Positions 3,842 through 61,688 of a DNA stretch of 64,000 nucleotides are shown here, piece after piece. Within the stretch, counting starts at the first letter, position 1, and each line of letters begins with the position of its first letter. The position numbers and the translations under genes are program-made. The stretch lies in IMG/VR virus record IMGVR_UViG_3300017971_000001, positions 124,001 through 188,000 of that record, one strand, 5' to 3'. Under the pieces are notes generated by a model. That model made no database searches. It worked only from the letters and a program-made list of their open reading frames with translations, and was not told the origin of the DNA.

Positions 3842-3996
3842 GTGTTTGTTCTCCTTGCGCGGCGGAACTGCCGTCGCGAAGAGAAACTAACAAGCCGATC
3901 CGACAACAACCAAAAAGAATCGGCGCGGAGGTCGTGTCCCCGCGCCGATTCAATTCACCCAGATAGCCCAACCCACCGCACCAAGCGGAGAGTCCA

Positions 3997-4068
3997 AGCG
4001 GGCGGCGGGGATCGAACCCGCGACGAACGGGTTGGAAACCCGACGCTCTACCGCTGAGCTACGCCCGC
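3997..4068 (-). tRNA. tRNA-Gly (TCC)
   Basis: GCGGGCG/CGCCCGC acceptor, GCTC/GAGC D arm, loop TT-TCC-AA, TTCGATC T loop, U discriminator; CCA not encoded. Confidence 0.93.
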
Positions 4069-4148
4069 GTTTTCAGCTGCGACACCCCACCCTCCGTGCC
4101 GCCTCACCCCGTGTCGACGAGGTCCCTGTATCTACCACTCCTGGTCAA

Positions 4149-4557
4149 TGGAGGTGCCGGGAGTCGAACCCGGGTCCGCGATAGCCTCCGACCGCGCGCT
4201 CTACGTGTGTATCCGTCTGTTTGATTTCGCTGCCCGAGCTCGAAACGGCACGATCTCGGTCAGCTATCCGTCGATTTTGCTTCGGATCGAGCTAGGCGGA
4301 CTCGCTCGAATTCCTAGTCCGTCTTTTGGCCCCGGACCCCTTCCTCACGGACGGGATGTCAGGCCGGGGTGGTCGAGCTAAGCGACCAGGGCGGGCTTGG
4401 CGGCGCCGTCGATCCACGCGTGGATCTGGGCGTCGGTCAGGCCCTGCTCGTTGCTGTTGGCAAATGAGCTTTTTGATCGGCTTTTAACGCAGCCAACCGA
4501 TCAACTGCGACACGCACGCACGACTTCGTCTAGCACGTCGAAACCAAGGTCACCCCC
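4149..4557 (-). ncRNA. ssrA: tmRNA
   Basis: 5' GGGGGTGACCTTGGTTTCGAC and 3' CCGGGTTCGACTCCCGGCACCTCCA with G3:U pair; tag frame 4461-4378 reads ANSNEQGLTDAQIHAWIDGAAKPALVA*. Confidence 0.95.
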
Positions 4558-4570
4558 TTGTTGTGGAGGA

Positions 4571-4599
4571 AGACTACCAAGGCGGGCCTGCGTGGTCAA
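4571..4599 (-). promoter_or_regulatory. Sigma70-type promoter for tmRNA
   Basis: TTGACC-N17-TAGTCT ending 13 nt before the tmRNA 5' end. Confidence 0.7.
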
Positions 4600-43222: not shown

Positions 43223-46200
43223 ATGAAGCCAACCGTCGAGCAGCAAGCGGTCATTGAGCACGGCACGGGTCCGGCGCTCGTCCTCGCTGACGCCGGCAGC
43301 GGCAAGACGACCACGATCCTGCTGCGGATCAAGAACCTGATCCGGCGCGGCGTTCCTGCCAACCAGATCCTTATGATCACGTTCAGCCGCGCCGGCACCG
43401 AGGACATGATCCGCCGCGCCCGCGAATTGGGCGTCCCTCGAGGCGTGCAGTACCGAACGCTGCACAGCGTCGGTAAGGAAATGATCAAACGAGGATTCCC
43501 GCTGCAGGAGGAACGGACCTTCCGCTGGCCGCGCGAGGACTCGTCGGAAGACGAAGGCGGGAGCATGACTTTCTCGATCCCGACCGAGGGCGAGGAGGCG
43601 AAGAAGGAACCGGCCTTCGGTCAGCGGGTCGGGCGGAAGCAGTCGCTCGATATCGATATCGAAAAGCTCATGAAGGCCACGCTGCTCAACTACAAGGACG
43701 AGCTCGAAGCGAAAGGCCCCGTCAGCCGCGCGCACCTCGCCCCCAAGGTCAGTGAGGTCATGAAGCTGATCGACTTCAGCAAGTCCAATCTGATCTTTCC
43801 GGACCTGATCGACGAAACGACCGGCGAGCTCTTCTGCGAAGGGGCCTGGAGCAGCAGCGACGGAACGAAGTTCCCCTGTTTCATGGACTGGGCCTGGGAG
43901 AACCTGAGGATCTCTGAGGACGAGAACGAGCCCGGCCGGATCCCGGTCGTGATCGAGGCCGTGCAGCGCTGCTACATGAAGCTGCAAATGGCCTCGGCCT
44001 GCCCAGAGTATCACTCGTCGAACGAGTACTACGCTCTGCACGCCCACCGCTGGATCACGTTTTCCGACATGATCGCGCTGCCGGCGCAGGCGATCCTCAT
44101 GGGCCTTCCCTGGGTCTCGCCGTGGTGGGGCAGGTTCTCGTTCGTGATCGTGGACGAGGTCCAGGACAACAACCTTGGCCAATGGGCCATGGTCCGTCAC
44201 CTCGCCCGAGACAACAACCTCATGGCGGTCGGCGACGACTCGCAATCCATTTTCAGCTTCCGCGGCGCCCGGCCTGAACTCATGGGCTTCTTCAGGCAGG
44301 AGCTCATGAACTCGCAGGTCTACGGGCTCTCGGTGAACTTCAGGTGTCCGCACGAGGTCGTCAATCAGGCGAACAACCTGCTCAGCCACGCGCCGAACAA
44401 GCTAAAGGAAAAGCCCGCCCAGGCGCTCGAGTCTGCCTTGCCGGGACGGATCACGGTCACGTCTTACGCCGAACCCCTGAGGGAGGCGCGCGGCGTCGTC
44501 AAGAAGATCCAGGGCTATCAGGCGGCTGGGTTCCCCTCGCATGAGATCGCTGTGATCTACCGCACGCATGCCAGCGCTGGCGCGGTCGAGATCGAACTGA
44601 TCCGCAACCGAATCCCCTACCGCGTTCAGGGCTCTCCGTTCTTCAGCAAACCGATCGTCGCGGCCACGATCGGTTACCTCGGTCTCGCACTCGAACCCGG
44701 AGATCGGGAGTGGCTCAAGGCCTGCTACTGCAAGCCGCTGAGGAGTCTCAACCGAGCCTTCTTGAACACGTACGACAACTACGCTGCAGCGGTCAACGCC
44801 TTCGAGAACGACGAGGTCAAGCAGTGGCGCTGGAAGCGAGGTATTCCCAACCTTCGCAAGGCGGTCACCGAAACCCGGAAGGCGCTCAAGGAAAAGGGGG
44901 TGGGGGACGCGATCCGCCATGTGCTGTGGAAGCTTGAACTCGTCAAGTTCTTCGTCAATCGAGCCTCGGGCGACGGGAAGATCGAGATCGAGGACTACGC
45001 AAGAAACCTGGAGGACCTAGGGGATTGCTACGACAGCGCAGAGGATCTCCTGCGATACGTCCGGCTCATGCGCGACGACGATATCGCCGAGGCCGACCAC
45101 GACAACACCTACCTGAACAAGAAGTCCGCTCCGGGTCGCGTGGTGTTGAGCACCATTCACCGCTGCGTCCACCCGGACACTCTTATCGAAACAGGCGAGG
45201 GCCTGATTCCGATCAAGCTAGCCTCGAAATCCGGTCTTATCGGAACCCCGAAAGGGCCCCTCCGCTACAAAAACCTTGTTCGCAATCCGAGCAGAATTGG
45301 GATAAAGGTCACGACCGAAAGAGGGTACGAGCTCACCATGACGCCGGACCACGGAATCCAGGCATGGGGAGGAAATGGATACCGACGGCACCGCGCAGAC
45401 GAATTAAAGGAAGGCCAATTCGTTCGCTTGAAGCTGGGCGTGAATTGCCCTGCTGGAGAGGTTCCTAGCCTTCCAAGTCCAGGAGTCGGTGATATCCGTG
45501 AGCACGTCTGCAAAATTCCGCAGCGAATGAGCAGCGAGCTAGCTGAATTCCTGGGTTTGATAGTTGGCGACGGAACTTGCTACAAGCGAGGCGTCAGGCT
45601 GAAGAAGCGCCACGAAGAGGTTGTAAACCGCTTCTGCGCGCTAGGGAAATCGCTTTTTGGGCTAAACGCTATCCGAAAGAAAGAACAGGCGAAGAAGCCC
45701 GGCTACAACCTGACTGGAGAATTCGTCCACTACGCAGAAATCAACAGCACCAAGCTTTGCAGGTGGCTTGAAATCCTCGGAGGCACCTCCCCTCAGGAGA
45801 AGTCGATCCCCGAGTGCGTCCTGAGGAGCCCGGCAATCATTCAGGCCTCATTTCTCAGAGGACTGTTTGAAGACGGAACTGTAAATGTGAAAAAGGGGAA
45901 ACTCGATCATATCGACTGGTCCAACAAAAGCGAAGAAATGGCCAAGCAGGTTCAGGTCATGCTTCTGAGATTTGGGGTCGCCTGCAAGCGCAGGAGGGTC
46001 GAACACCAAGGAAGGAATAATACGCACATTTACATTTACGGAGAATTTGCCTCCAAGTTCGGAAGGTCGATCGGAATGATCAGCAAGGTCAAACAAGACC
46101 GCCTTTCGTGCGCCCCTGGCCGCCAAATGTATCCGGTCCCTATAGCCAAAAACGAACTTCGCTTCCTGAGGAACCAGGACAGAGCAAACGCCAGCCACAG

Positions 46201-46627
46201 AGGGAGGGTAAGCCGTTGGAAAGCAGCCCTCGTCCCCGATTTGATCGGGAAGCTGGGTTTCTTTCACGACCCGATTAAGAGTATTGAAATCGTAGAGTGC
46301 GAGTCCATGTGCGTCGAGGTTCCTGAAATGGGGAGGTTCCTTCAGAACGGATTCGACGGGCATAATTGCAAAGGCCTAGAGTACGGAACCGTTTTTTTGA
46401 TTCGGGCGAACGAGGGGGTCGTTCCGCACCGCCTGGCGGACCTGTCCGAAGAGCGCCGCCTGTTCTACGTCGCGGTCACCCGGACCAAATCGACCTGCGA
46501 GATCAGCTACGTGCAGGAGACCACCTTAGGCCCGGCGTTCCAGAGCCAGTTCATTCAGGAGCTCAAGCAGCGAAAGGAGGTGCGGATTGGACGAAAAGCT
46601 GACGAAAGCTTGGCGAGCTTGGCGTAG
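43223..46627 (+). CDS. uvrD: UvrD/PcrA-like SF1 helicase, intein-containing
   Basis: AGSGKTT, DEVQD, VGDDSQSIFSFRGA, NFRC, TIHR|CKGLE, EERRLFYVAVTR. Confidence 0.93.
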   Translation: MKPTVEQQAVIEHGTGPALVLADAGSGKTTTILLRIKNLIRRGVPANQILMITFSRAGTEDMIRRARELGVPRGVQYRTLHSVGKEMIKRGFPLQEERTFRWPREDSSEDEGGSMTFSIPTEGEEAKKEPAFGQRVGRKQSLDIDIEKLMKATLLNYKDELEAKGPVSRAHLAPKVSEVMKLIDFSKSNLIFPDLIDETTGELFCEGAWSSSDGTKFPCFMDWAWENLRISEDENEPGRIPVVIEAVQRCYMKLQMASACPEYHSSNEYYALHAHRWITFSDMIALPAQAILMGLPWVSPWWGRFSFVIVDEVQDNNLGQWAMVRHLARDNNLMAVGDDSQSIFSFRGARPELMGFFRQELMNSQVYGLSVNFRCPHEVVNQANNLLSHAPNKLKEKPAQALESALPGRITVTSYAEPLREARGVVKKIQGYQAAGFPSHEIAVIYRTHASAGAVEIELIRNRIPYRVQGSPFFSKPIVAATIGYLGLALEPGDREWLKACYCKPLRSLNRAFLNTYDNYAAAVNAFENDEVKQWRWKRGIPNLRKAVTETRKALKEKGVGDAIRHVLWKLELVKFFVNRASGDGKIEIEDYARNLEDLGDCYDSAEDLLRYVRLMRDDDIAEADHDNTYLNKKSAPGRVVLSTIHRCVHPDTLIETGEGLIPIKLASKSGLIGTPKGPLRYKNLVRNPSRIGIKVTTERGYELTMTPDHGIQAWGGNGYRRHRADELKEGQFVRLKLGVNCPAGEVPSLPSPGVGDIREHVCKIPQRMSSELAEFLGLIVGDGTCYKRGVRLKKRHEEVVNRFCALGKSLFGLNAIRKKEQAKKPGYNLTGEFVHYAEINSTKLCRWLEILGGTSPQEKSIPECVLRSPAIIQASFLRGLFEDGTVNVKKGKLDHIDWSNKSEEMAKQVQVMLLRFGVACKRRRVEHQGRNNTHIYIYGEFASKFGRSIGMISKVKQDRLSCAPGRQMYPVPIAKNELRFLRNQDRANASHRGRVSRWKAALVPDLIGKLGFFHDPIKSIEIVECESMCVEVPEMGRFLQNGFDGHNCKGLEYGTVFLIRANEGVVPHRLADLSEERRLFYVAVTRTKSTCEISYVQETTLGPAFQSQFIQELKQRKEVRIGRKADESLASLA
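45164..46366 (+). mobile_element. Intein with LAGLIDADG endonuclease (401 aa) in UvrD motif V
   Basis: R|CVHPDT...DGHN|C; TPDH; LGLIVGDG and FLRGLFEDG; visibly more AT-rich than flanks. Confidence 0.93.
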
Positions 46628-52397: not shown

Positions 52398-52674
52398 TGG
52401 CCAAGCTCCAGCAATACCTCTCCGACAAGCTCAAGCTCGCCAAGACGCAGCCCGTCTGGCTAACCTATCGCAAATACCGCTACAAGGTCGAATTGCCGGA
52501 AGATATCGACGCCCTGATCCCGGACGAGGGAGCCGAGGCGTTCGCGAAGTCGAAGTTCGGGATCACGCTACTGCGCGGCCTGCACCGACACAACAACCGC
52601 CTGCGGGCCGGCTGCCGCTACCTCAACGATCAGGAGATCCTTGGGATCGTGACCGAGAAGCACGACGCATGAGC

Positions 52675-53496
52675 CTACCAAGGCCCCGATCGCTTCTTCC
52701 CGTGGACCCAAAGGCCGCCCCCGCCAATTCGGGCGAGCTCCTTGAGCTTCTCCCGGTGGTAGTCGCCAGCCCCCCAGACCATGAAGTTCACGGGCGGGAG
52801 CTTCTTCTCCTTGCGCCAGGCCAAGCCCTTCTTGTAGGCCTCTTCGGCCTCCTTGACGTTGACGTCGCCGTCCGTCACCAGGGCGACGGTCAAGCGATCA
52901 CACGGATCGCGCATGGCGACCCGGATCGCTCGAGCGAGATCCGTGCTCCCGTCGGCCGAGCAGGTCAGCAGGTATCGCATGAGCGAAGGGTAGTGGCTCG
53001 GCATGGACGCCCAGCCCTGGCGGACGCAATGGTCGCCGCACTTCTCCTTGGGATCGTGCTTGTGCTCGGGCTTGCCCTTCCAGCGGATCGCGTACGCGCT
53101 GTAGGTGATCAGACCCGCCTGGAATCCGTCCACGGGAGACATGAGGATCAACTGCACCGAGGCGACAGCCTGCTGGAGCAAGCCCTCCATGCTGCCGGAA
53201 GTGTCGACCACGAAGATCACGCGATCGGTCAGGCGGAAGCTCTTCTTCGCGCGCACGAGCTCGAGCGGCATGACGCTCGGCGGGGGAGGGATCTCGATCT
53301 TCTTCCTCGGTTTGGGGAGAGCCTCCTCGAACCATTCCTCCTCGAAGACATGCGGGACCGGCATGGGCGGCGGCGTGATCTTCGGCTTCGGCTGAACGAC
53401 CGGGGGCTGGGTCGGCTTGACGTTGCCCTGGGGCTTCTGCTGCGCGAGCGCAGGCGCGGCAACGAGGAGGAGAAGGGGCAGGATCAAACGCCTCAT
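52675..53496 (-). CDS. Secreted von Willebrand factor A domain protein
   Basis: Signal peptide; VVDTSGSM MIDAS, GSTD, VTDG, LARIGGG. Confidence 0.85.
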   Translation of the reverse strand: MRRLILPLLLLVAAPALAQQKPQGNVKPTQPPVVQPKPKITPPPMPVPHVFEEEWFEEALPKPRKKIEIPPPPSVMPLELVRAKKSFRLTDRVIFVVDTSGSMEGLLQQAVASVQLILMSPVDGFQAGLITYSAYAIRWKGKPEHKHDPKEKCGDHCVRQGWASMPSHYPSLMRYLLTCSADGSTDLARAIRVAMRDPCDRLTVALVTDGDVNVKEAEEAYKKGLAWRKEKKLPPVNFMVWGAGDYHREKLKELARIGGGGLWVHGKKRSGPW

Positions 53497-53554
53497 AAGC
53501 TAGAGCTCCATACCTCCAGCCTAGCAGCGTGCCGCGGTTCCGTCTGGAAACACG

Positions 53555-53932
53555 AAGAGCCAGGGGGTGACCCTGGCTCCTCGCGTCGCTTATACAGCCT
53601 CTGCGCAAGTAGGGACTCGGCGCAGAAGACGCACTTGAAAGTGCGACTCCGGACATTGGCTGTTGCTTCTACGCTACCTCAGGACTTGGGGCCTGCAACT
53701 CGCCCAGTCGGTGGACAGGCCGGCTGGCTGTGGTGTAGAACGGAAGGTCCGTGCAGTCGCACTTCGAACTGCACTCGAACGAGGAGATCGATCACCCGTA
53801 CATGCCAACGCCTCGCAGAGCCAACTGCGAGGCGTCGTGAGTCAGAGCAACAGCTAAGACTAAGGGTCACCAACGCCCTGAATGTAGCTCGTTGCTCTGA
53901 CTCCTGGCAAGTCCAACTTGTCTGGGAGAGTC
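53555..53932. ncRNA. Candidate structured non-coding RNA
   Basis: At least eight hairpins in an interval lacking a credible ORF. Confidence 0.5.
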
Positions 53933-54528
53933 ATGGAAGCCGAGTACGGCAGTAGTAAACACTTGGGACGCAATAACTTGCCTGTTCCCGAGTTTTCCGA
54001 AAAAAAGTTTCAAGAACCTCCAGGGAAGGTCGGAAAACCTCCCGAAAGGCCGCGCATGGACTCCGAATGGTACGAATTTCAACGACCCGGCTTCAGCAAT
54101 AAGAACGCGAAGCGAAGGAAGAAGGCCTGGAGAAAGCGCGCTGAGAGGCTCATGGAACACTTCGGACGGGGCGTGGAACCGGGCTGGACGATCTGCTCCA
54201 AGTGCAAAGGTGTGGGAGTCCTTCCTGACGATCTCAACTTCGACAAGCACGGCCTGAGTCTGAAGGAATCTCGATCGATTGCGGATTCAATCTTCGAGCG
54301 AGAGAAAGAGGAAATGGACAAGAGTCTGAGTAAGGAGGAGCAGAAAAGGCTCGAGCTTTCGTTCGGACCGACTTCAGGTGATTTCGTCGTCTGCCCGGAG
54401 TGCAAAAAGCTTCTCGTTTGCATTTTCGAAGAGCTCCGCGACGGCGCCTGGGCCGGCGAGAGCATTGAATTCAACTTTGCTGACGGAAAGACCTACCAAC
54501 AATCCACGTTCACTCGAGAGACGACCTC

Positions 54529-57500
54529 ATGAGCAACACCGAAGAGAAAAGCGATAGCTGGTCGTACTGGCACCTCCCCTTCCCCCAGCAGGTCCCGCTG
54601 CTCACGCGGCAGGGGCTGTTCCACTACGGGCCGCGCAACGAGCCGGCGCCGCTGCGTCAGCTGTTCAAGCGGGCGCAGGCCCAGGCAATCCGCCTGTTCG
54701 ACAACGGGGTCTACGCGGTCCCGCGGGTGCTCGTCACCCGCAAGAAGGGGCAGCTGGACAAGCACGTGCTTAAGCAGAAGGTGCCGTACAAGAAGCGCGC
54801 GCGCTCCTGCGGGCACCCGCACTGCCGCGCTGGTGTCGACGGCGAAGGTAAGCACGTCCCGGCTCCGGAGCAGCACGCTGCCTTTGTCCGGAAGGACACC
54901 TTCCTGCGCTCCGTGCGGGTCGGCATGCCCCGCAAGGAAGCCTTGCTCGAGGCCTCGCTCGCGGCGACCGACTGCCTCCGGCGTCACCAGGACCAGCAGG
55001 GAACGCGACAGTCCTGGTACGACCACGTCCGCGGCTTCGCCAAGGGCTGGGGCTGGGAGGAGGGCCAGAGCCCCAAGCGGGGCGAAGGGCGGAGTGGGTG
55101 GTGGGAATACCACCGCGGTGCTTACTCGTACTCGCTCTACGGCGAGCGGCGGTTCGAAGTCAACTTCTTCGGAATCGACCACGACGGTGGCGTCTGGAAG
55201 AAAGGCAAGGTTAACACCGAGATCGTCAAGACCCCCGAGGAAGACCGGCGCGCGCTGGCTCAGTTCTTTCAGAGCCACGGACTGCGTGGCTACTTCGCCA
55301 ACACTTCGCACAGCGGCGGGCTCCTGCGCGACAAGGGGATCGGCGTCCACGATCGCTGCTTGATCGACGGCGGACTCCCGTCATGGTTTGCGCACAAGCT
55401 CGGCAAGGAGATCACTCGCCACGTTCTGCGCGATCGCCCCTACGTCGACGACATTGAGGTGTTCCCCAAGAGCCACGAGTTCAGCGACAACTGGGCGATC
55501 GACAGGAAGACGGCCAAGGTCAAGGCCCCTTCCGGCGACAGTCACCTCCTCAACGCGCCGCTCGCCGCTCACCTGCACCACCTCGGCAAGGCGAGCCTGA
55601 TTGACCCCTCGACCGGGCGCCCCTTCGTCTACTACGACGACTCGGTCGCCTACGCCGAATCCATTCAGGGCGACTCGGTCGAGAAGCTGTGCATGATCGC
55701 GAACATGCTCGGCTTCGATATCAACGACCCCTGGAACGCGCTCAAGGACGAGCCGAACGTCGATCTCGAGCGACTGTGGGAGACGCGACCCGTTCACGAG
55801 ATCCAGGGCAAGGAGAACCCTTACCTGGGATCGCGGCTGAAGCAGAAGACGCTGACCGTGCCCCTCAAGGGGGAGAAGCGCAGCGGTCAGAAGCGCGTGA
55901 TCGACATGGGGCAGGAGGACCCGCTCGCCCAGGCGCTCCACGAAGCCGGCGTCGACGCCCTCGAGGTCTGCAAGGCGGCGGGAACCGAGCTCAAGAAGGT
56001 CGGCGAGCGCTGGACGGGCTGCTGCCCGGTCCACAAGGGCACCAACCCGACCCAGTTCAACGTGTTTCCGGCGCGAGACGGCGTGCTCGCCGCCAAGTGC
56101 CTGAGTCCGGACTGCGCGGACGAGCACCCCCACGGCTGGAAGAACCCGATCGCGTTGCACCAGGCGGTCCACGGCTGCTCGTGGGGCGAGTCGCGCGACG
56201 CGGTCGCGGCCATGGCGGGAATCGAGAACCCCCGCGACGAGAAGTGGCAGCGGAAGAGTCGCTTCCAGGAGAAGTACGCCAGCCAGTGGAAGAACGTCTA
56301 CGAGTGGGTCGGCAAGCGGGTCGGTGAACTGCCGCGCGGCAAGTACCACAAGTTCCTGCAGGCCATGGTCAACGCGCTCGACCGACTCAACCAAGAGGAG
56401 CAGGTAATCGACCCCGAGGAGATCGCGGTTTCGATCTTTCACCACGACACCCAGCTGCTCGACGTCAAGGCCTTCTTCGACGAGACGGTCCTTCCGACGC
56501 TCAAGAAGCTGGACAAGCAGCGAGAGGACCGCAAGAAGGGCCTCAGCAAGAGCAGCGGCGTATCGGGGATCGGTTACCTGCGCCGGGAGTTCGGCGCCGT
56601 CTGCATGAACGAACTGGTGAGCGCGATCATGGCCGACACCCAGTTCAAGCTCGAGTGGGGCCGCGTCGGCCGGGCGATCACCGGCTGCGCGCCGCTCAAG
56701 TACGACCGAAAGGGCCAAGACCTCGTCTGGGACATGCACAACGACGCCAGGCACCGCGAAGAGGACCTGCTGAACTTCACGACGGTCCCGACCTCGGACC
56801 AGGCGAAACCGCTGGACGACGTCCAGATCGAGGAGCTCCAGGAGATCGTCAAGATCGATCGATATATCAGCAGGCAGGCAGGGCGCCTCGTCGGCTGCTC
56901 GATCACCAAGGAAGAGGCCTGGAACGATCTCACGGGCAAGAAGCTCTGGAGCACCTGGAAGCGCTGCGGGTCGCGCCATTGCACCAAGTGCGGCCTGCTG
57001 CACTACTCGACCATGTACAAGGCCTTGATCCGCAAGTGGCAATACCACAAGGGCCCGATCTGGGTCGCGGAGACCCGGGGCCTGACTCGAGCCCAGGTCG
57101 ACGAGGCCCGCGCCGGGCTCAGCGACATGGGCAGCATTGCCCAGCGCGTCATGTTCACGGGCTACAGGGAGGACGGGCACGTCGTCACGACCTACTCGGC
57201 CACCCAGGATCAGGCGGGATTCTGCGCCTCGGGCAAGGTGGTCGGCGGCGTAGACCGCGACCAGGAGTTCGAGTTCAAGTTCGACACGATCGAGGAAGCT
57301 GCAGCCCACGCGGTCTCTTCCATGTTCGGCCTGACGGCTTACGTCTCTGATCTGATCAAGGGCCAGGACGTCCAGGAGCTCGAGGCCGAGCTCGGGTTCC
57401 TCAAGCACCGGCGTCTGGTCGGCAAGACCCGCGAGTCCCTTGGAGGCGCGACGGTCGAGGACGTCAAGGCGATCCGCAAGGAAGAGGTCGAGGCGCTGCA

Positions 57501-57831
57501 CGAAGGCGACGGGGTCGACGAGAACGTCCTCGTCGGGGCGGGCAGCAAGGACAGCGACATGGCCGCGGCCGACGAGGAAGCCGCTGGGCTCCGACTCGAC
57601 CACGACGGCGACGTGTTCGAGATCGGCGCGCAGATCAGCTACCGGCTGATCACGCCGTTGGGCAACACGATCGCGGTCTCCGAACGGCCCTTTTCGATCG
57701 ATCGAGTCGTCAGTTTCATGCGCTTCAACCACGTCTTGAAGAACGACCTGGCGCTGCTCCGCGAGCAGGAAAACCAGGTCAGGAGCGCGGTCAACCAGAC
57801 CTTTAGCTGGTCTACGAAGGCGGCTGCCTAG
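54529..57831 (+). CDS. Putative primase/replication protein: AEP-like domain, CHC2 Zn finger, Cys-rich C-terminal domain
   Basis: GIDHD, SHSGG..GVH, IEVFPK; GCCPVH...KCLSPDC; CGSRHCTKC. Confidence 0.65.
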   Translation: MSNTEEKSDSWSYWHLPFPQQVPLLTRQGLFHYGPRNEPAPLRQLFKRAQAQAIRLFDNGVYAVPRVLVTRKKGQLDKHVLKQKVPYKKRARSCGHPHCRAGVDGEGKHVPAPEQHAAFVRKDTFLRSVRVGMPRKEALLEASLAATDCLRRHQDQQGTRQSWYDHVRGFAKGWGWEEGQSPKRGEGRSGWWEYHRGAYSYSLYGERRFEVNFFGIDHDGGVWKKGKVNTEIVKTPEEDRRALAQFFQSHGLRGYFANTSHSGGLLRDKGIGVHDRCLIDGGLPSWFAHKLGKEITRHVLRDRPYVDDIEVFPKSHEFSDNWAIDRKTAKVKAPSGDSHLLNAPLAAHLHHLGKASLIDPSTGRPFVYYDDSVAYAESIQGDSVEKLCMIANMLGFDINDPWNALKDEPNVDLERLWETRPVHEIQGKENPYLGSRLKQKTLTVPLKGEKRSGQKRVIDMGQEDPLAQALHEAGVDALEVCKAAGTELKKVGERWTGCCPVHKGTNPTQFNVFPARDGVLAAKCLSPDCADEHPHGWKNPIALHQAVHGCSWGESRDAVAAMAGIENPRDEKWQRKSRFQEKYASQWKNVYEWVGKRVGELPRGKYHKFLQAMVNALDRLNQEEQVIDPEEIAVSIFHHDTQLLDVKAFFDETVLPTLKKLDKQREDRKKGLSKSSGVSGIGYLRREFGAVCMNELVSAIMADTQFKLEWGRVGRAITGCAPLKYDRKGQDLVWDMHNDARHREEDLLNFTTVPTSDQAKPLDDVQIEELQEIVKIDRYISRQAGRLVGCSITKEEAWNDLTGKKLWSTWKRCGSRHCTKCGLLHYSTMYKALIRKWQYHKGPIWVAETRGLTRAQVDEARAGLSDMGSIAQRVMFTGYREDGHVVTTYSATQDQAGFCASGKVVGGVDRDQEFEFKFDTIEEAAAHAVSSMFGLTAYVSDLIKGQDVQELEAELGFLKHRRLVGKTRESLGGATVEDVKAIRKEEVEALHEGDGVDENVLVGAGSKDSDMAAADEEAAGLRLDHDGDVFEIGAQISYRLITPLGNTIAVSERPFSIDRVVSFMRFNHVLKNDLALLREQENQVRSAVNQTFSWSTKAAA

Positions 57832-60384: not shown

Positions 60385-60804
60385 TTGATCGTTCGTCGCG
60401 ACCTGCCGCTCGGAGTCATTGCTGCCCAGCTTGCTCATGCCGCTCGTGAGAGTTCGCGCACGCGCTGGACGCTCCCCGAAAAGCACCTCCACTTCAAGCG
60501 CTGCAAGCGCGACCCGGACGAAGTCGTCTACGTGGTCGTGCTCTCCGTTGACTCGGGGCCCGAGCTCCGCGAGCTCGCGTCCAAGCTCGAGCGCCGGCGG
60601 ATCCCCACTTACTTGATCGAGGAGCCCGACCTGGACGGTCAGGCGACCGCGGTCGGCGTCGGCCCGGTCGATACCGGTCGAGCCTGGAAGGCTGTCCGTC
60701 GTGTGCTCGGCCAGCTTCCCCTATTCGGTCCGTCGGATCGATCAACGCTCAAGCGAGCCCATTTCAGCAAGGTGAATCGGTGGCCGAGTTCCGCAAGCTC
60801 ATGA
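60385..60804 (+). CDS. Peptidyl-tRNA hydrolase 2 (Pth2)-like protein, true start uncertain
   Basis: YLIVRRDL..GVIAAQLAHAA, VVVL, EPD, TAVGVGP. Confidence 0.8.
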   Translation: MIVRRDLPLGVIAAQLAHAARESSRTRWTLPEKHLHFKRCKRDPDEVVYVVVLSVDSGPELRELASKLERRRIPTYLIEEPDLDGQATAVGVGPVDTGRAWKAVRRVLGQLPLFGPSDRSTLKRAHFSKVNRWPSSASS

Positions 60805-61613: not shown

Positions 61614-61688
61614 CCGCCAGTAGCTCAGTTGGTAGAGCGTCGCGTCTAAGCAGCGCGAAGGTCAAGGGTTCGAGTCCCTTCCGGCGGA
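61614..61688 (+). tRNA. tRNA-like gene with enlarged anticodon loop, directly before the array
   Basis: Canonical D and T arms; TCGCG-TCTAAGCAG-CGCGA; one acceptor mismatch. Confidence 0.7.

What the first reader, a model, noticed from the sequence alone, without database searches (positions are those of the whole stretch)
53555..53932. Highly structured ~380-nt intergenic RNA candidate with alternative pairings
Seen: stems include GAGCCAGGG/CCCTGGCTC, TCTGCGC/GCGCAGA, CGCACT/AGTGCG, TTCTACGCTA/TGGTGTAGAA, CCAGTCGG/CCGGCTGG, GTGCAGT/ACTGCAC, an 11-bp stem at 53808-53835 and a 13-bp stem 53839-53851/53891-53903. AGCAACAGC (53846-53854) could instead pair with GCTGTTGCT (53659-53667). G:U pairs favour the plus strand. 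RNase P hallmark motifs are absent. Inference: a novel ncRNA or a cis switch upstream of the primase operon.
Basis: partly seen in the sequence, partly recalled or inferred. Interest (0 to 1): 0.6.

Follow-up and report, generated by a model that had tools for sequence, protein, structure and literature searches.

The report
Conserved structured non-coding element, huge phage

Summary
The stems are real at the stated coordinates. The region folds far better than shuffles (z about -5.8 as RNA on either strand, -7.7 as DNA) and is among the three most structured spots in the 245-kb phage genome. It fills the 436-nt gap 53497-53932 between a minus-strand VWA gene and a plus-strand zinc-ribbon gene followed by a primase-like gene.

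One syntenic relative (L015) and three partial strain variants were found. Changes sit in loops and linkers. Stems stay intact or change on both sides. Divergence is 9% at paired and 20% at unpaired positions, against 33% at fourfold sites of the adjacent gene.

Rfam gives no match and no ORF is conserved.

The only transcription signals lie on the minus strand. They are a conserved sigma-70-like promoter (53910-53881) and a strong terminator hairpin (53587-53549).

The best reading is a new ~330-nt minus-strand RNA, either stand-alone or the leader of the VWA gene. A plus-strand leader and a DNA-level site remain possible. No RNA data exist.

The parts
53497..53932 (.). The whole 436-nt non-coding gap between divergent genes. 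The same gap (450 nt) with the same neighbours occurs in relative L015 (5033-5482).
53881..53910 (-). Sigma-70-like promoter: -35 TTGCCA (53910-53905), 18-nt spacer, -10 TACATT (53886-53881). Predicted start is about 53874-53878.
   Evidence: It is the only promoter-like site in 53300-54100 (shuffles 0.1). It is one of 11 top-scoring sites in the whole genome, 9 of which lie in intergenic DNA. It is conserved in L015 as TTGCCA-18-TACGAT.
53540..53874 (-). Predicted minus-strand RNA of about 330 nt, running from promoter to terminator. This is an inference; no RNA data exist.
   Evidence: z -5.75; no conserved ORF
53549..53587 (-). Terminator-like hairpin. The core is 53557-65/53571-79 (9 bp). 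On the minus strand it extends to 17 bp with 3 G:U, followed by a U-rich tail (UUCGUGUUU). It ends 53 nt upstream of the VWA start codon.
   Evidence: The closing pair G53565-C53571 becomes A-T in both L015 and strain X7.
53589..53598 (-). 3' strand of a long-range helix with 53796-53805. On the minus strand it forms 9 bp with 2 G:U; on plus it has mismatches. It joins two otherwise 'unpaired' conserved blocks.
   Evidence: columns 133-142/353-362. The one-sided changes 53804 G>A (L015) and 53797 C>T (X4, X5) keep the pairing on minus.
53600..53626 (.). Hairpin of 7 bp plus 3 bp. Its only change is in the loop (53612).
53630..53645 (.). 6-bp hairpin; only the tetraloop changes (53637/38, in L015 and X7). 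It can alternatively pair with 53755-53764.
   Evidence: (I1)
53646..53666 (.). Invariant junction.
   Evidence: (I5)
53667..53740 (.). Central branched domain. The outer 11-bp helix 53667-77/53730-40 is invariant and has 2 G:U on plus. The inner hairpins change pairing register between lineages. G53691-C53720 becomes C-G in L015, and G53707-C53724 becomes A-T in X5.
53751..53774 (.). Hairpin in which T53752-A53773 becomes C-G in L015. Two inner pairs become G.A/A.G.
53775..53805 (.). The least conserved stretch; L015 carries a 12-nt insertion here.
53808..53835 (.). 11-bp GC-rich hairpin. All 22 stem bases are invariant, while 3 of the 6 loop bases differ in L015.
   Evidence: (I3)
53837..53904 (.). 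Long hairpin of 13 + 5 + 5 bp (16 + 7 + 4 in L015). The indels and most changes fall in the internal and apical loops. The apical closing pair changes from A-T to C-G. Its 3' arm overlaps the minus-strand promoter.
53906..53922 (+). 7-bp hairpin with one G:U on plus, 3 nt before the ribosome-binding site of the plus gene. Two of its 3 loop bases change in L015.
53925..53935 (+). Ribosome-binding site (GGGAGAG) and ATG of the 199-aa gene.
53497..53532 (-). Region directly upstream of VWA. It holds a 31-nt invariant block with GGAG and a weak promoter-like site (-10 TAGGCT, 53523-53518).
52675..53496 (-). VWA-domain protein with a signal-peptide-like N-terminus and a DxSxS motif; 96% identical in L015.
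53933..54532 (+). 199-aa protein with two CxxC pairs; only 39% identical in L015.
54529..57831 (+). 1100-aa primase-like protein with a CHC2 zinc ribbon. The relative P0004 matches an AEP domain.

Best explanation
The gap holds a conserved, non-coding, multi-hairpin element selected for its secondary structure, and it most likely acts as RNA. The most coherent reading is a transcript of about 330 nt on the MINUS strand. It would start about 53874 at a sigma-70-type promoter (53910-53881), as used elsewhere in this phage. It would run through the 11-bp hairpin 53808-35, a core closed by the long-range helix 53796-53805/53589-98, and the hairpins at 53630-45 and 53600-26. It would end at the intrinsic-terminator-like hairpin 53587-53549, 53 nt before the VWA start codon. 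That makes it either a stand-alone non-coding RNA gene, built like the phage's own tmRNA gene, or a terminator-ended leader that gates read-through into VWA. Shown: the structure, its conservation, the stem-preserving substitutions, the absence of coding signal, and the consensus signals. Inferred: that the RNA exists, its ends and strand, and any function.
For: Structure: z about -5.8 on either strand and -5.75 for the predicted RNA; top three genome-wide.
Conservation: L015 has the same gene order and an ~88% identical gap. Fourfold sites of the adjacent VWA gene differ at 33% (46/138), against 8.8% (19/216) at paired and 20.4% (34/167) at unpaired positions, with helices taken from the window's fold alone (Fisher p 0.0016).
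Placing the same substitutions at random raises the consensus energy from -170 to -133 (sd 8) on plus and from -192 to -144 (sd 9) on minus; 0 of 120 permutations did as well.
Double changes that keep pairs: 53565/53571 in L015 and X7 (not shown to be independent lineages), 53752/53773, 53691/53720, 53707/53724 (X5), and the apical pair of the long hairpin. Loop-only changes occur in five hairpins.
Strand: the only promoter-like site is on minus. It belongs to the genome's 11 best sites, 9 of them intergenic, one just upstream of the tmRNA gene, and L015 keeps it. The 53587-53549 hairpin is one of 8 strong terminator-like hairpins, all intergenic; by my comparison with the strand blocks, the other seven point the way their neighbouring genes run. 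Minus-only helices: 53549-87 and 53796-53805/53589-98.
Against: No RNA data exist: none of the 10 public runs listed is RNA. Only two full lineages and three short variants are available, so covariation has little statistical power, and counts of compensatory pairs do not exceed the permutation null. A start at ~53874 would leave the 3' arm of the best-conserved long hairpin (53837-53904) outside the RNA, although that hairpin shows stem-preserving change. It would also exclude the minus-strand helix 53906-17/53499-53514, which has one double and two one-sided consistent changes. Two helices need G:U on the plus strand (53667-77/53730-40 and 53906-22). Folding energy does not discriminate the strands, and the element folds even better with DNA parameters. 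The U-tract of the terminator is interrupted.
Confidence: 0.42

Rival explanations
1. This is the first reader's model: a plus-strand structured leader or intercistronic RNA of the zinc-ribbon/primase operon. Plus-strand transcription from the upstream genes would read antisense through VWA and into the element. The hairpins at 53808-35, 53837-53904 and 53906-22 would then stabilise or process the mRNA (the long hairpin resembles an RNase III site) or control translation at the nearby ribosome-binding site.
For: The hairpin 53906-22 sits 3 nt before the ribosome-binding site. It has a conserved G:U on plus and loop-only changes, and folds at -6.6 on plus against -2.5 kcal/mol on minus. The 11-bp helix 53667-77/53730-40 has two invariant G:U on plus. 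The full long hairpin 53837-53904, with its covarying apical pair, is contained only in a transcript spanning both arms. The element lies within a long run of plus-strand genes. 53545 T>C turns U.G into C-G in the plus helix 53542-48/53648-54.
Against: No plus-strand promoter-like site scoring 16 or more lies in or near the gap, and no plus-strand terminator was found. The left third folds better on minus, and its extended helices are mismatched on plus. 53581 T>C and 53804 G>A break plus-strand pairs but keep minus-strand ones. The plus-strand pairing of 53657-66 with the ribosome-binding site is broken in L015.
Confidence: 0.25
2. A DNA-level element: a replication origin or primase-loading site made of hairpins that form in single-stranded DNA. 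This would resemble the ssi signals of RSF1010 oriV or the complementary-strand origin of phage G4, and it sits next to the primase-like gene.
For: The element is adjacent to the primase-like gene. Both strands are equally structured, and the z-score is strongest with DNA parameters (-7.69). A sharp drop in similarity to L015 begins just past the element at about 54000, as at a recombination boundary.
Against: There are no iterons or tandem repeats, and no AT-rich stretch: GC is 58% against 63% for the genome. The cumulative GC-skew minimum lies about 10 kb away. Several conserved helices depend on G:T wobble pairs. The element is about 88% conserved, while the DNA encoding the N-terminal half of the primase-like protein is only 40-50% identical. 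Co-evolution of an origin with its recognising domain would not predict that.
Confidence: 0.12
3. Two back-to-back structured 5' leaders. The left part (about 53497-53655) would serve the minus-strand VWA mRNA and the right part (about 53660-53932) the plus-strand operon, with promoters in between.
For: Strand preference by domain: 53540-53656 folds better on minus, while 53657-53745 and 53904-24 fold better on plus. Each preferred part is the one nearest the gene on that strand.
Against: No promoter-like sites lie in the middle of the gap. Long-range helices link the two halves in both consensus folds. The per-domain energy differences are within the noise set by composition.
Confidence: 0.13

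Closest known systems
Promoter-to-terminator RNA genes in phages, for example this phage's own tmRNA gene (window 4146-4557, minus)
   Same: A sigma-70-like promoter directly upstream, no ORF, strong structure, and a strong intrinsic terminator downstream.
   Different: No family match. Its expression is not shown, and its function is unknown.
Large structured RNAs of unknown function found in phages and prophages (GOLLD, ROOL, HEARO; from my own knowledge of Rfam)
   Same: A multi-helix non-coding element several hundred bases long, carried on a phage genome.
   Different: No covariance-model match at E up to 10. It is about 330-390 nt rather than roughly 600-800 nt. It is known from only two phage lineages.
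Terminator-based leaders (riboswitches, T-boxes, attenuators)
   Same: On the minus strand the order is promoter, long structured leader, terminator hairpin, 53 nt, ribosome-binding site, ATG of VWA.
   Different: No known aptamer or T-box match. The one candidate antiterminator pairing (53809-23 with 53574-88, 73% complementary) is weakened in L015.
Bacterial RNase P RNA
   Same: Similar size. L015 carries a GGAAAGTCCG 10-mer on the plus strand that resembles the conserved CR-I motif (the motif is recalled from memory).
   Different: No RNase P model matches on either strand. The window reads GGAAGGTCCG, and no downstream partner for a P4 helix exists.
Single-strand initiation hairpins of origins (RSF1010 ssiA/ssiB, phage G4; from my own knowledge)
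   Same: Stable hairpins on both strands beside a primase-like gene.
   Different: About a dozen hairpins over 400 nt, helices that depend on wobble pairs, and no iterons or AT-rich region.

Membership tests
Any Rfam 15 family (including RNase P, 6S, SRP, tmRNA, T-box, riboswitches, GOLLD, ROOL, HEARO) | Covariance-model score at or above the family's gathering threshold | tested here: not met
   A gathering-threshold scan of the window found only a tmRNA and two tRNAs elsewhere. A sensitive scan of 53300-54200 gave a best score of 17.5 bits (E 2.2), from a model with a gathering score of 32; every hit was under half its threshold.
RNase P RNA | P4 helix formed by the conserved CR-I and CR-V segments | tested here: not met
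   The only trace is a CR-I-like 10-mer in L015 on the plus strand. No complementary downstream segment exists and no model matches.
Conserved structured RNA (generic) | Substitutions between relatives preserve the helices (compensatory or loop-restricted change) more than chance | tested here: met
   Paired positions differ at 8.8% and unpaired at 20.4%, p 0.0016. Random placement of the same substitutions was always worse, 0 of 120. There are 4 (plus) or 5 (minus) double changes that keep pairs and two more in strain variants. With so few sequences, an R-scape-type test is not possible.
Intrinsic (factor-independent) terminator | GC-rich hairpin followed by a U-rich tract on the transcribed strand, in intergenic DNA | tested here: met
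   Minus strand 53587-53549 with tail UUCGUGUUU. It falls in the same class as the terminator after the tRNA/tmRNA genes. Activity was not tested.
Sigma-70-type promoter | -35 and -10 hexamers 16-18 nt apart, with A2 and T6 of the -10 conserved | tested here: met
   TTGCCA-18-TACATT on minus. It is conserved as TTGCCA-18-TACGAT in L015 and lies in the top 11 genome-wide. Activity is not testable here.
Riboswitch or attenuator leader | A conserved alternative (antiterminator) pairing that competes with the terminator | tested here: inconclusive
   The one candidate (I4) loses complementarity in L015. No known aptamer matches.
Replication origin | Repeated initiator-binding sites and an AT-rich unwinding element; a strand-skew switch | tested here: not met
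   No repeat family with more than 2 copies. GC is 58%. The skew minimum lies about 10 kb away.
Protein-coding gene | A conserved ORF with changes biased to third codon positions | tested here: not met
   The 428-aa plus frame and the short ORFs are not conserved in frame or in sequence in L015. By my tally from the substitution list, the changes show no third-position bias in that frame.

The most novel reading that the evidence does not exclude
This is the founding member of a new family of large (~330-390 nt) structured non-coding RNAs carried by huge phages that also encode a compact Cas12-type CRISPR system. It would be expressed from a host-type promoter and act in trans, for example as a decoy, a sponge or a scaffold. 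A bolder version is that it serves as a template or cofactor RNA for the adjacent AEP-type primase-polymerase, in the way defence reverse transcriptases use an upstream structured RNA.
Probability: 0.3. Interest if true: 0.65.

Novelty: new member of a known kind. Interest (0 to 1): 0.5.

Why it matters
Huge phages are known for carrying tRNAs, tmRNAs and CRISPR systems, but few other non-coding RNAs of theirs have been described. This element is large, single-copy, strongly structured and under clear purifying selection, and it has no described family. It sits at the boundary of a hypervariable replication module. If it is an RNA gene, it adds a new orphan RNA class to phage biology, and simple experiments can test it (end mapping, in vitro transcription, structure probing). 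If it is a DNA site, it would mark the replication start of a phage lineage that has no cultured member.

Tried and rejected
- **Rfam.** Scans at the gathering threshold across the whole 245-kb genome, and a sensitive scan of the gap, gave no match.
- **Coding reading.** The 428-aa plus frame 52669-53955 runs antisense to VWA and stays open across the gap in both phages. Its changes show no codon-position bias (my tally), its end differs in L015, and the short ORFs are not conserved.
- **Paralogues.** None were found in the genome.
- **Close relatives.** None appeared in IMG/VR, the GenBank phage set, JGI metagenome contigs or GTDB genomes, using peptide patterns, blastn/tblastn or exact DNA words. 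Word-based protein searches found only the query itself. The exhaustive HMMER search gave the one useful relative.
- **More distant VWA homologues.** L016-L019 have only ~100-nt upstream gaps in the gene tables, too short for the element; the gaps themselves were not searched.
- **A second contig of the L015 lineage (L022).** It is identical across the element.
- **Link to the phage's CRISPR repeat.** The two share only a 9-nt antisense match, about 0.1 expected by chance by my estimate.
- **Strand from folding energy.** The difference is fully explained by G+T content.
- **Antiterminator pairing and the plus-strand pairing with the ribosome-binding site.** Neither is conserved in L015.
- **Phage-specific promoter motif.** A 7-mer enrichment upstream of genes gave only ribosome-binding-site-like words and the CRISPR repeat.
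- **Literature.** One search found nothing relevant and a second failed on term syntax.
- **Covariance model of the element.** None was built, because the alignment exceeds the size the tool will calibrate.

Full report
**Setting.** The window is bases 124001-188000 of a 245,276-bp virus record with 123-bp terminal repeats and 63% GC. The finding lies in a 436-nt gap, 53497-53932. To its left is a minus-strand gene (52675-53496) for a secreted-looking VWA-domain protein with a DxSxS motif. To its right is a plus-strand gene (53933-54532) for a 199-aa protein with two CxxC pairs. Next comes a 1100-aa protein (54529-57831) with a weak DnaG-type CHC2 zinc ribbon. Its one relative also matches an archaeo-eukaryotic primase domain at threshold (27.1 bits against a cutoff of 27). 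Independent gene calls on two other assemblies of the same phage leave the same gap empty, and the gap is identical in them.

- All listed stems and the alternative pairing are present.
- The stretch folds at -178.5 kcal/mol on plus (z -5.77) and -175.0 kcal/mol on minus (z -5.82). No shuffle does as well. With DNA parameters z is -7.69.
- In a scan of the whole genome with 150-nt windows, the window at 53801 ranks third of about 4,900.
- The other top places (genome 228.8, 110.8 and 241.8 kb) are single ordinary terminator hairpins between co-directional genes. A cluster of about a dozen stems is therefore unusual here.
- The element has no second copy in the genome, no tandem or multi-copy direct repeats, and no Rfam match, even at E up to 10.

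**Relatives.** Pattern, BLAST and word-based searches found nothing. An exhaustive HMMER search with the primase-like protein found one relative at 54% identity (P0004). Its contig, L015, has the same order: a minus VWA gene, a 450-nt gap, a plus 172-aa gene, then the primase-like gene. The two gaps align at about 88% identity.

This is not exceptional conservation by itself. The VWA gene and the upstream genes are 85-93% identical in DNA. The 199-aa gene and the first half of the primase-like gene drop to 40-50%, starting near 54000.

The useful yardstick is neutral divergence. The VWA proteins are 96% identical, yet 33% of fourfold-degenerate sites differ (46/138). In the element only 8.8% of paired positions (19/216) and 20.4% of unpaired positions (34/167) differ (Fisher p 0.0016). 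The helices for this count came from the window's own fold, so L015 did not shape them. The left half (53542-53745) differs at only about 6% (my count), including its single-stranded junctions.

Contigs from three further metagenomes carry strain variants at 94-97% identity that cover parts of the gap. In the flanking coding DNA their differences fall on third codon positions.

**Pattern of change.**
- Loop-only changes occur in the hairpins 53600-26, 53630-45, 53680-95, 53808-35 (3 of 6 loop bases, 0 of 22 stem bases) and 53906-22 (2 of 3 loop bases).
- Double changes that keep a pair:
  - G53565-C53571 to A-T, in both L015 and X7.
  - T53752-A53773 to C-G.
  - G53691-C53720 to C-G.
  - G53707-C53724 to A-T, in X5.
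  - The apical pair of the long hairpin, A-T to C-G.
- All indels fall in loops or in the linker 53775-53805, where L015 has 12 extra bases.
- Folding L015 on its own recovers nearly every helix. One inner hairpin of the central domain has shifted register.
- When the same substitutions are placed at random positions, the two-sequence consensus energy rises from -170 to -133 (sd 8) on plus and from -192 to -144 (sd 9) on minus. None of 120 permutations does as well.
- A few changes do break pairs: 53720 C>A in X5, 53851 C>A in X4, and a tandem G.A/A.G in 53755-56/53769-70.
- With only two full sequences, the bare count of compensatory pairs is not above the permutation null.

The conclusion is that secondary structure is under selection. 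The detailed fold is not settled.

**Coding?** A plus-strand frame, 52669-53955 (428 aa), is open across the gap in both phages. It is the mirror frame of VWA. Its product is arginine/leucine-rich, and changes in the gap show no third-position bias in that frame (my tally). In L015 the frame ends elsewhere. The short ORFs on either strand are not conserved. I reject a coding reading.

- Plus-dependent helices: 53667-77/53730-40 (two invariant G:U), 53906-22 (one), and the change 53545 T>C (U.G to C-G).
- Minus-dependent helices:
  - The hairpin 53557-79 extends to 17 bp (53549-87) with three G:U. A fourth arises from 53581 T>C in L015 and X7.
  - The 53600-26 stem is extended on minus.
  - A long-range helix joins 53796-53805 to 53589-98. 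It links two blocks that otherwise look like conserved single strands. The one-sided changes 53804 G>A (L015) and 53797 C>T (X4, X5) both stay paired on minus.
- The minus strand folds somewhat better, alone and in consensus. In 160 random 436-nt windows of this genome, the strand difference tracks G+T content (r -0.84). The observed differences are what that composition predicts. Energy therefore says nothing about strand.

**Transcription signals are more telling.**
- The tool's only promoter-like site in 53300-54100 is on the minus strand: TTGCCA (53910-05), 18 nt, TACATT (53886-81). Shuffles give 0.1 expected.
- In my weighted scan of both strands of the whole genome, only 11 sites score this high. 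Nine lie in intergenic DNA (which is about 15% of the genome), mostly a short way upstream of a gene on the same strand. One ends 14 nt before the tmRNA gene. This phage evidently uses host-type promoters.
- L015 keeps the site as TTGCCA-18-TACGAT, preserving the critical first, second and sixth bases of the -10.
- A genome-wide search for strong hairpins with a T-rich tail gives eight sites with stems of 12 bp or more and 7 or more G-C pairs. All eight are intergenic. By my comparison with the strand blocks, the other seven point the way their neighbouring genes run. One closes the tRNA/tmRNA unit (also found by the tool). Another is the minus-strand hairpin 53587-53549.
- Promoter and terminator thus bracket about 330 nt of minus-strand sequence with no ORF. 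That stretch folds with z -5.75.
- The terminator ends 53 nt before the VWA start codon. After it come the most variable bases of the gap (53533-45), then a 31-nt invariant block holding a weak promoter-like site and the ribosome-binding site.

**What the minus-strand model does not explain.**
- A start near 53874 falls inside the apical part of the long hairpin 53837-53904. That hairpin, whose stems are conserved and whose apical pair covaries, would then not form in this RNA.
- The minus-strand consensus also contains a helix between 53906-17 and 53499-53514 that covers the VWA ribosome-binding site. It has one double and two one-sided consistent changes. That helix needs a start further upstream.
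- Either plus-strand RNA also matters here, or the minus start lies elsewhere, or these arms act as DNA.

The DNA-level rival (an origin or a primase-loading site) gains from the location and from the very strong DNA z-score. Against it:
- There are no iterons.
- There is no AT-rich region.
- The skew minimum lies about 10 kb away.
- The DNA encoding the N-terminal half of the neighbouring primase-like protein has diverged far more than the element.

**Verdict.** This is a real, conserved, structured, non-coding element without a known family. My ranking is:

| Reading | Weight |
|---|---|
| Minus-strand RNA of about 330 nt, stand-alone or VWA leader | 0.42 |
| Plus-strand leader or processing structure of the primase-like operon | 0.25 |
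| Two back-to-back leaders | 0.13 |
| DNA-level site | 0.12 |

The remainder is for something unforeseen. None of the 10 public runs listed is RNA, so the decisive data are transcript ends. The element is a new member of a known kind (an orphan structured phage RNA or leader), of moderate interest.

**Housekeeping.** Read laying was given 3,001 letters. No alternative genetic code was used.

Noticed in passing
Outside the window: genome 113,194-113,950 (locus L009 14194-14950, minus strand), with a gene at L009 14948-17071 (minus): A CRISPR array of about 11 copies of a 36-nt repeat (GCAACAAGTCCTGGCAGGGGCCTATTTACCTGCCAC, period 66-79 nt). A 707-aa protein with a Cas12f1-like TNB domain (PF07282, E 8.8e-13) lies directly upstream. 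This is a compact Cas12-type system of the kind reported in huge phages.
   Followed up: partly
Outside the window: genome ~118,694 (minus) and ~241,878 (plus; locus L013 ~14,478): Solitary near-copies of the CRISPR repeat, far from the array. Each lies in intergenic DNA a short way upstream of a gene on the same strand (210 and 39 nt). They could be mini-arrays or regulatory/decoy repeats.
   Followed up: no
window 3917-4571 (minus): The phage carries a tmRNA gene (4146-4557; tag ADQKAHLPTATSRA) and a tRNA-Gly (3997-4068). A sigma-70-like promoter ends at 4571 and a strong terminator sits at 3951-3917. A tRNA-Leu lies at 61614-61688, and two to three further tRNAs lie outside the window (one only at threshold, 29.7 bits).
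   Followed up: partly
window 43223-46627 (+): A UvrD-type helicase of 1134 aa, interrupted by an intein-like insert with a LAGLIDADG homing-endonuclease domain.
   Followed up: no
window 52669-53955 (+); L015 4202-5437 (+): A 428-aa frame antisense to the VWA gene stays open through the whole non-coding gap in both phages. It starts by overlapping the stop of the upstream gene. It was judged non-coding from its composition and substitution pattern, but its openness over about 150 non-coding codons is unusual.
   Followed up: partly
window ~54000-56200 compared with L015: DNA identity to the relative falls from ~90% to 40-50% just past the element and recovers to ~80% in the C-terminal part of the primase-like gene. 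This marks a replaced or hypervariable module covering the 199-aa gene and the N-terminal (AEP and zinc-ribbon) half.
   Followed up: partly
window 53906-53917 with 53499-53514 (minus-strand pairing): A long-range helix over the VWA ribosome-binding site in which L015 changes both sides (GTTGGA/TCTAGC becomes GTCAGA/TCTGAC). It cannot form in an RNA that starts at the predicted promoter.
   Followed up: partly
L015 5278-5292 (plus strand; aligns to window ~53742-53756): L015 carries GGAAAGTCCG, which resembles the RNase P CR-I motif; the window reads GGAAGGTCCG. No RNase P model matches, so this is probably chance.
   Followed up: yes
window ~60,385-60,804 (L002 8857-9276): A gene with a PTH2 (peptidyl-tRNA hydrolase) domain. 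Together with the tmRNA and tRNAs, it adds to the phage's set of translation-related genes.
   Followed up: no
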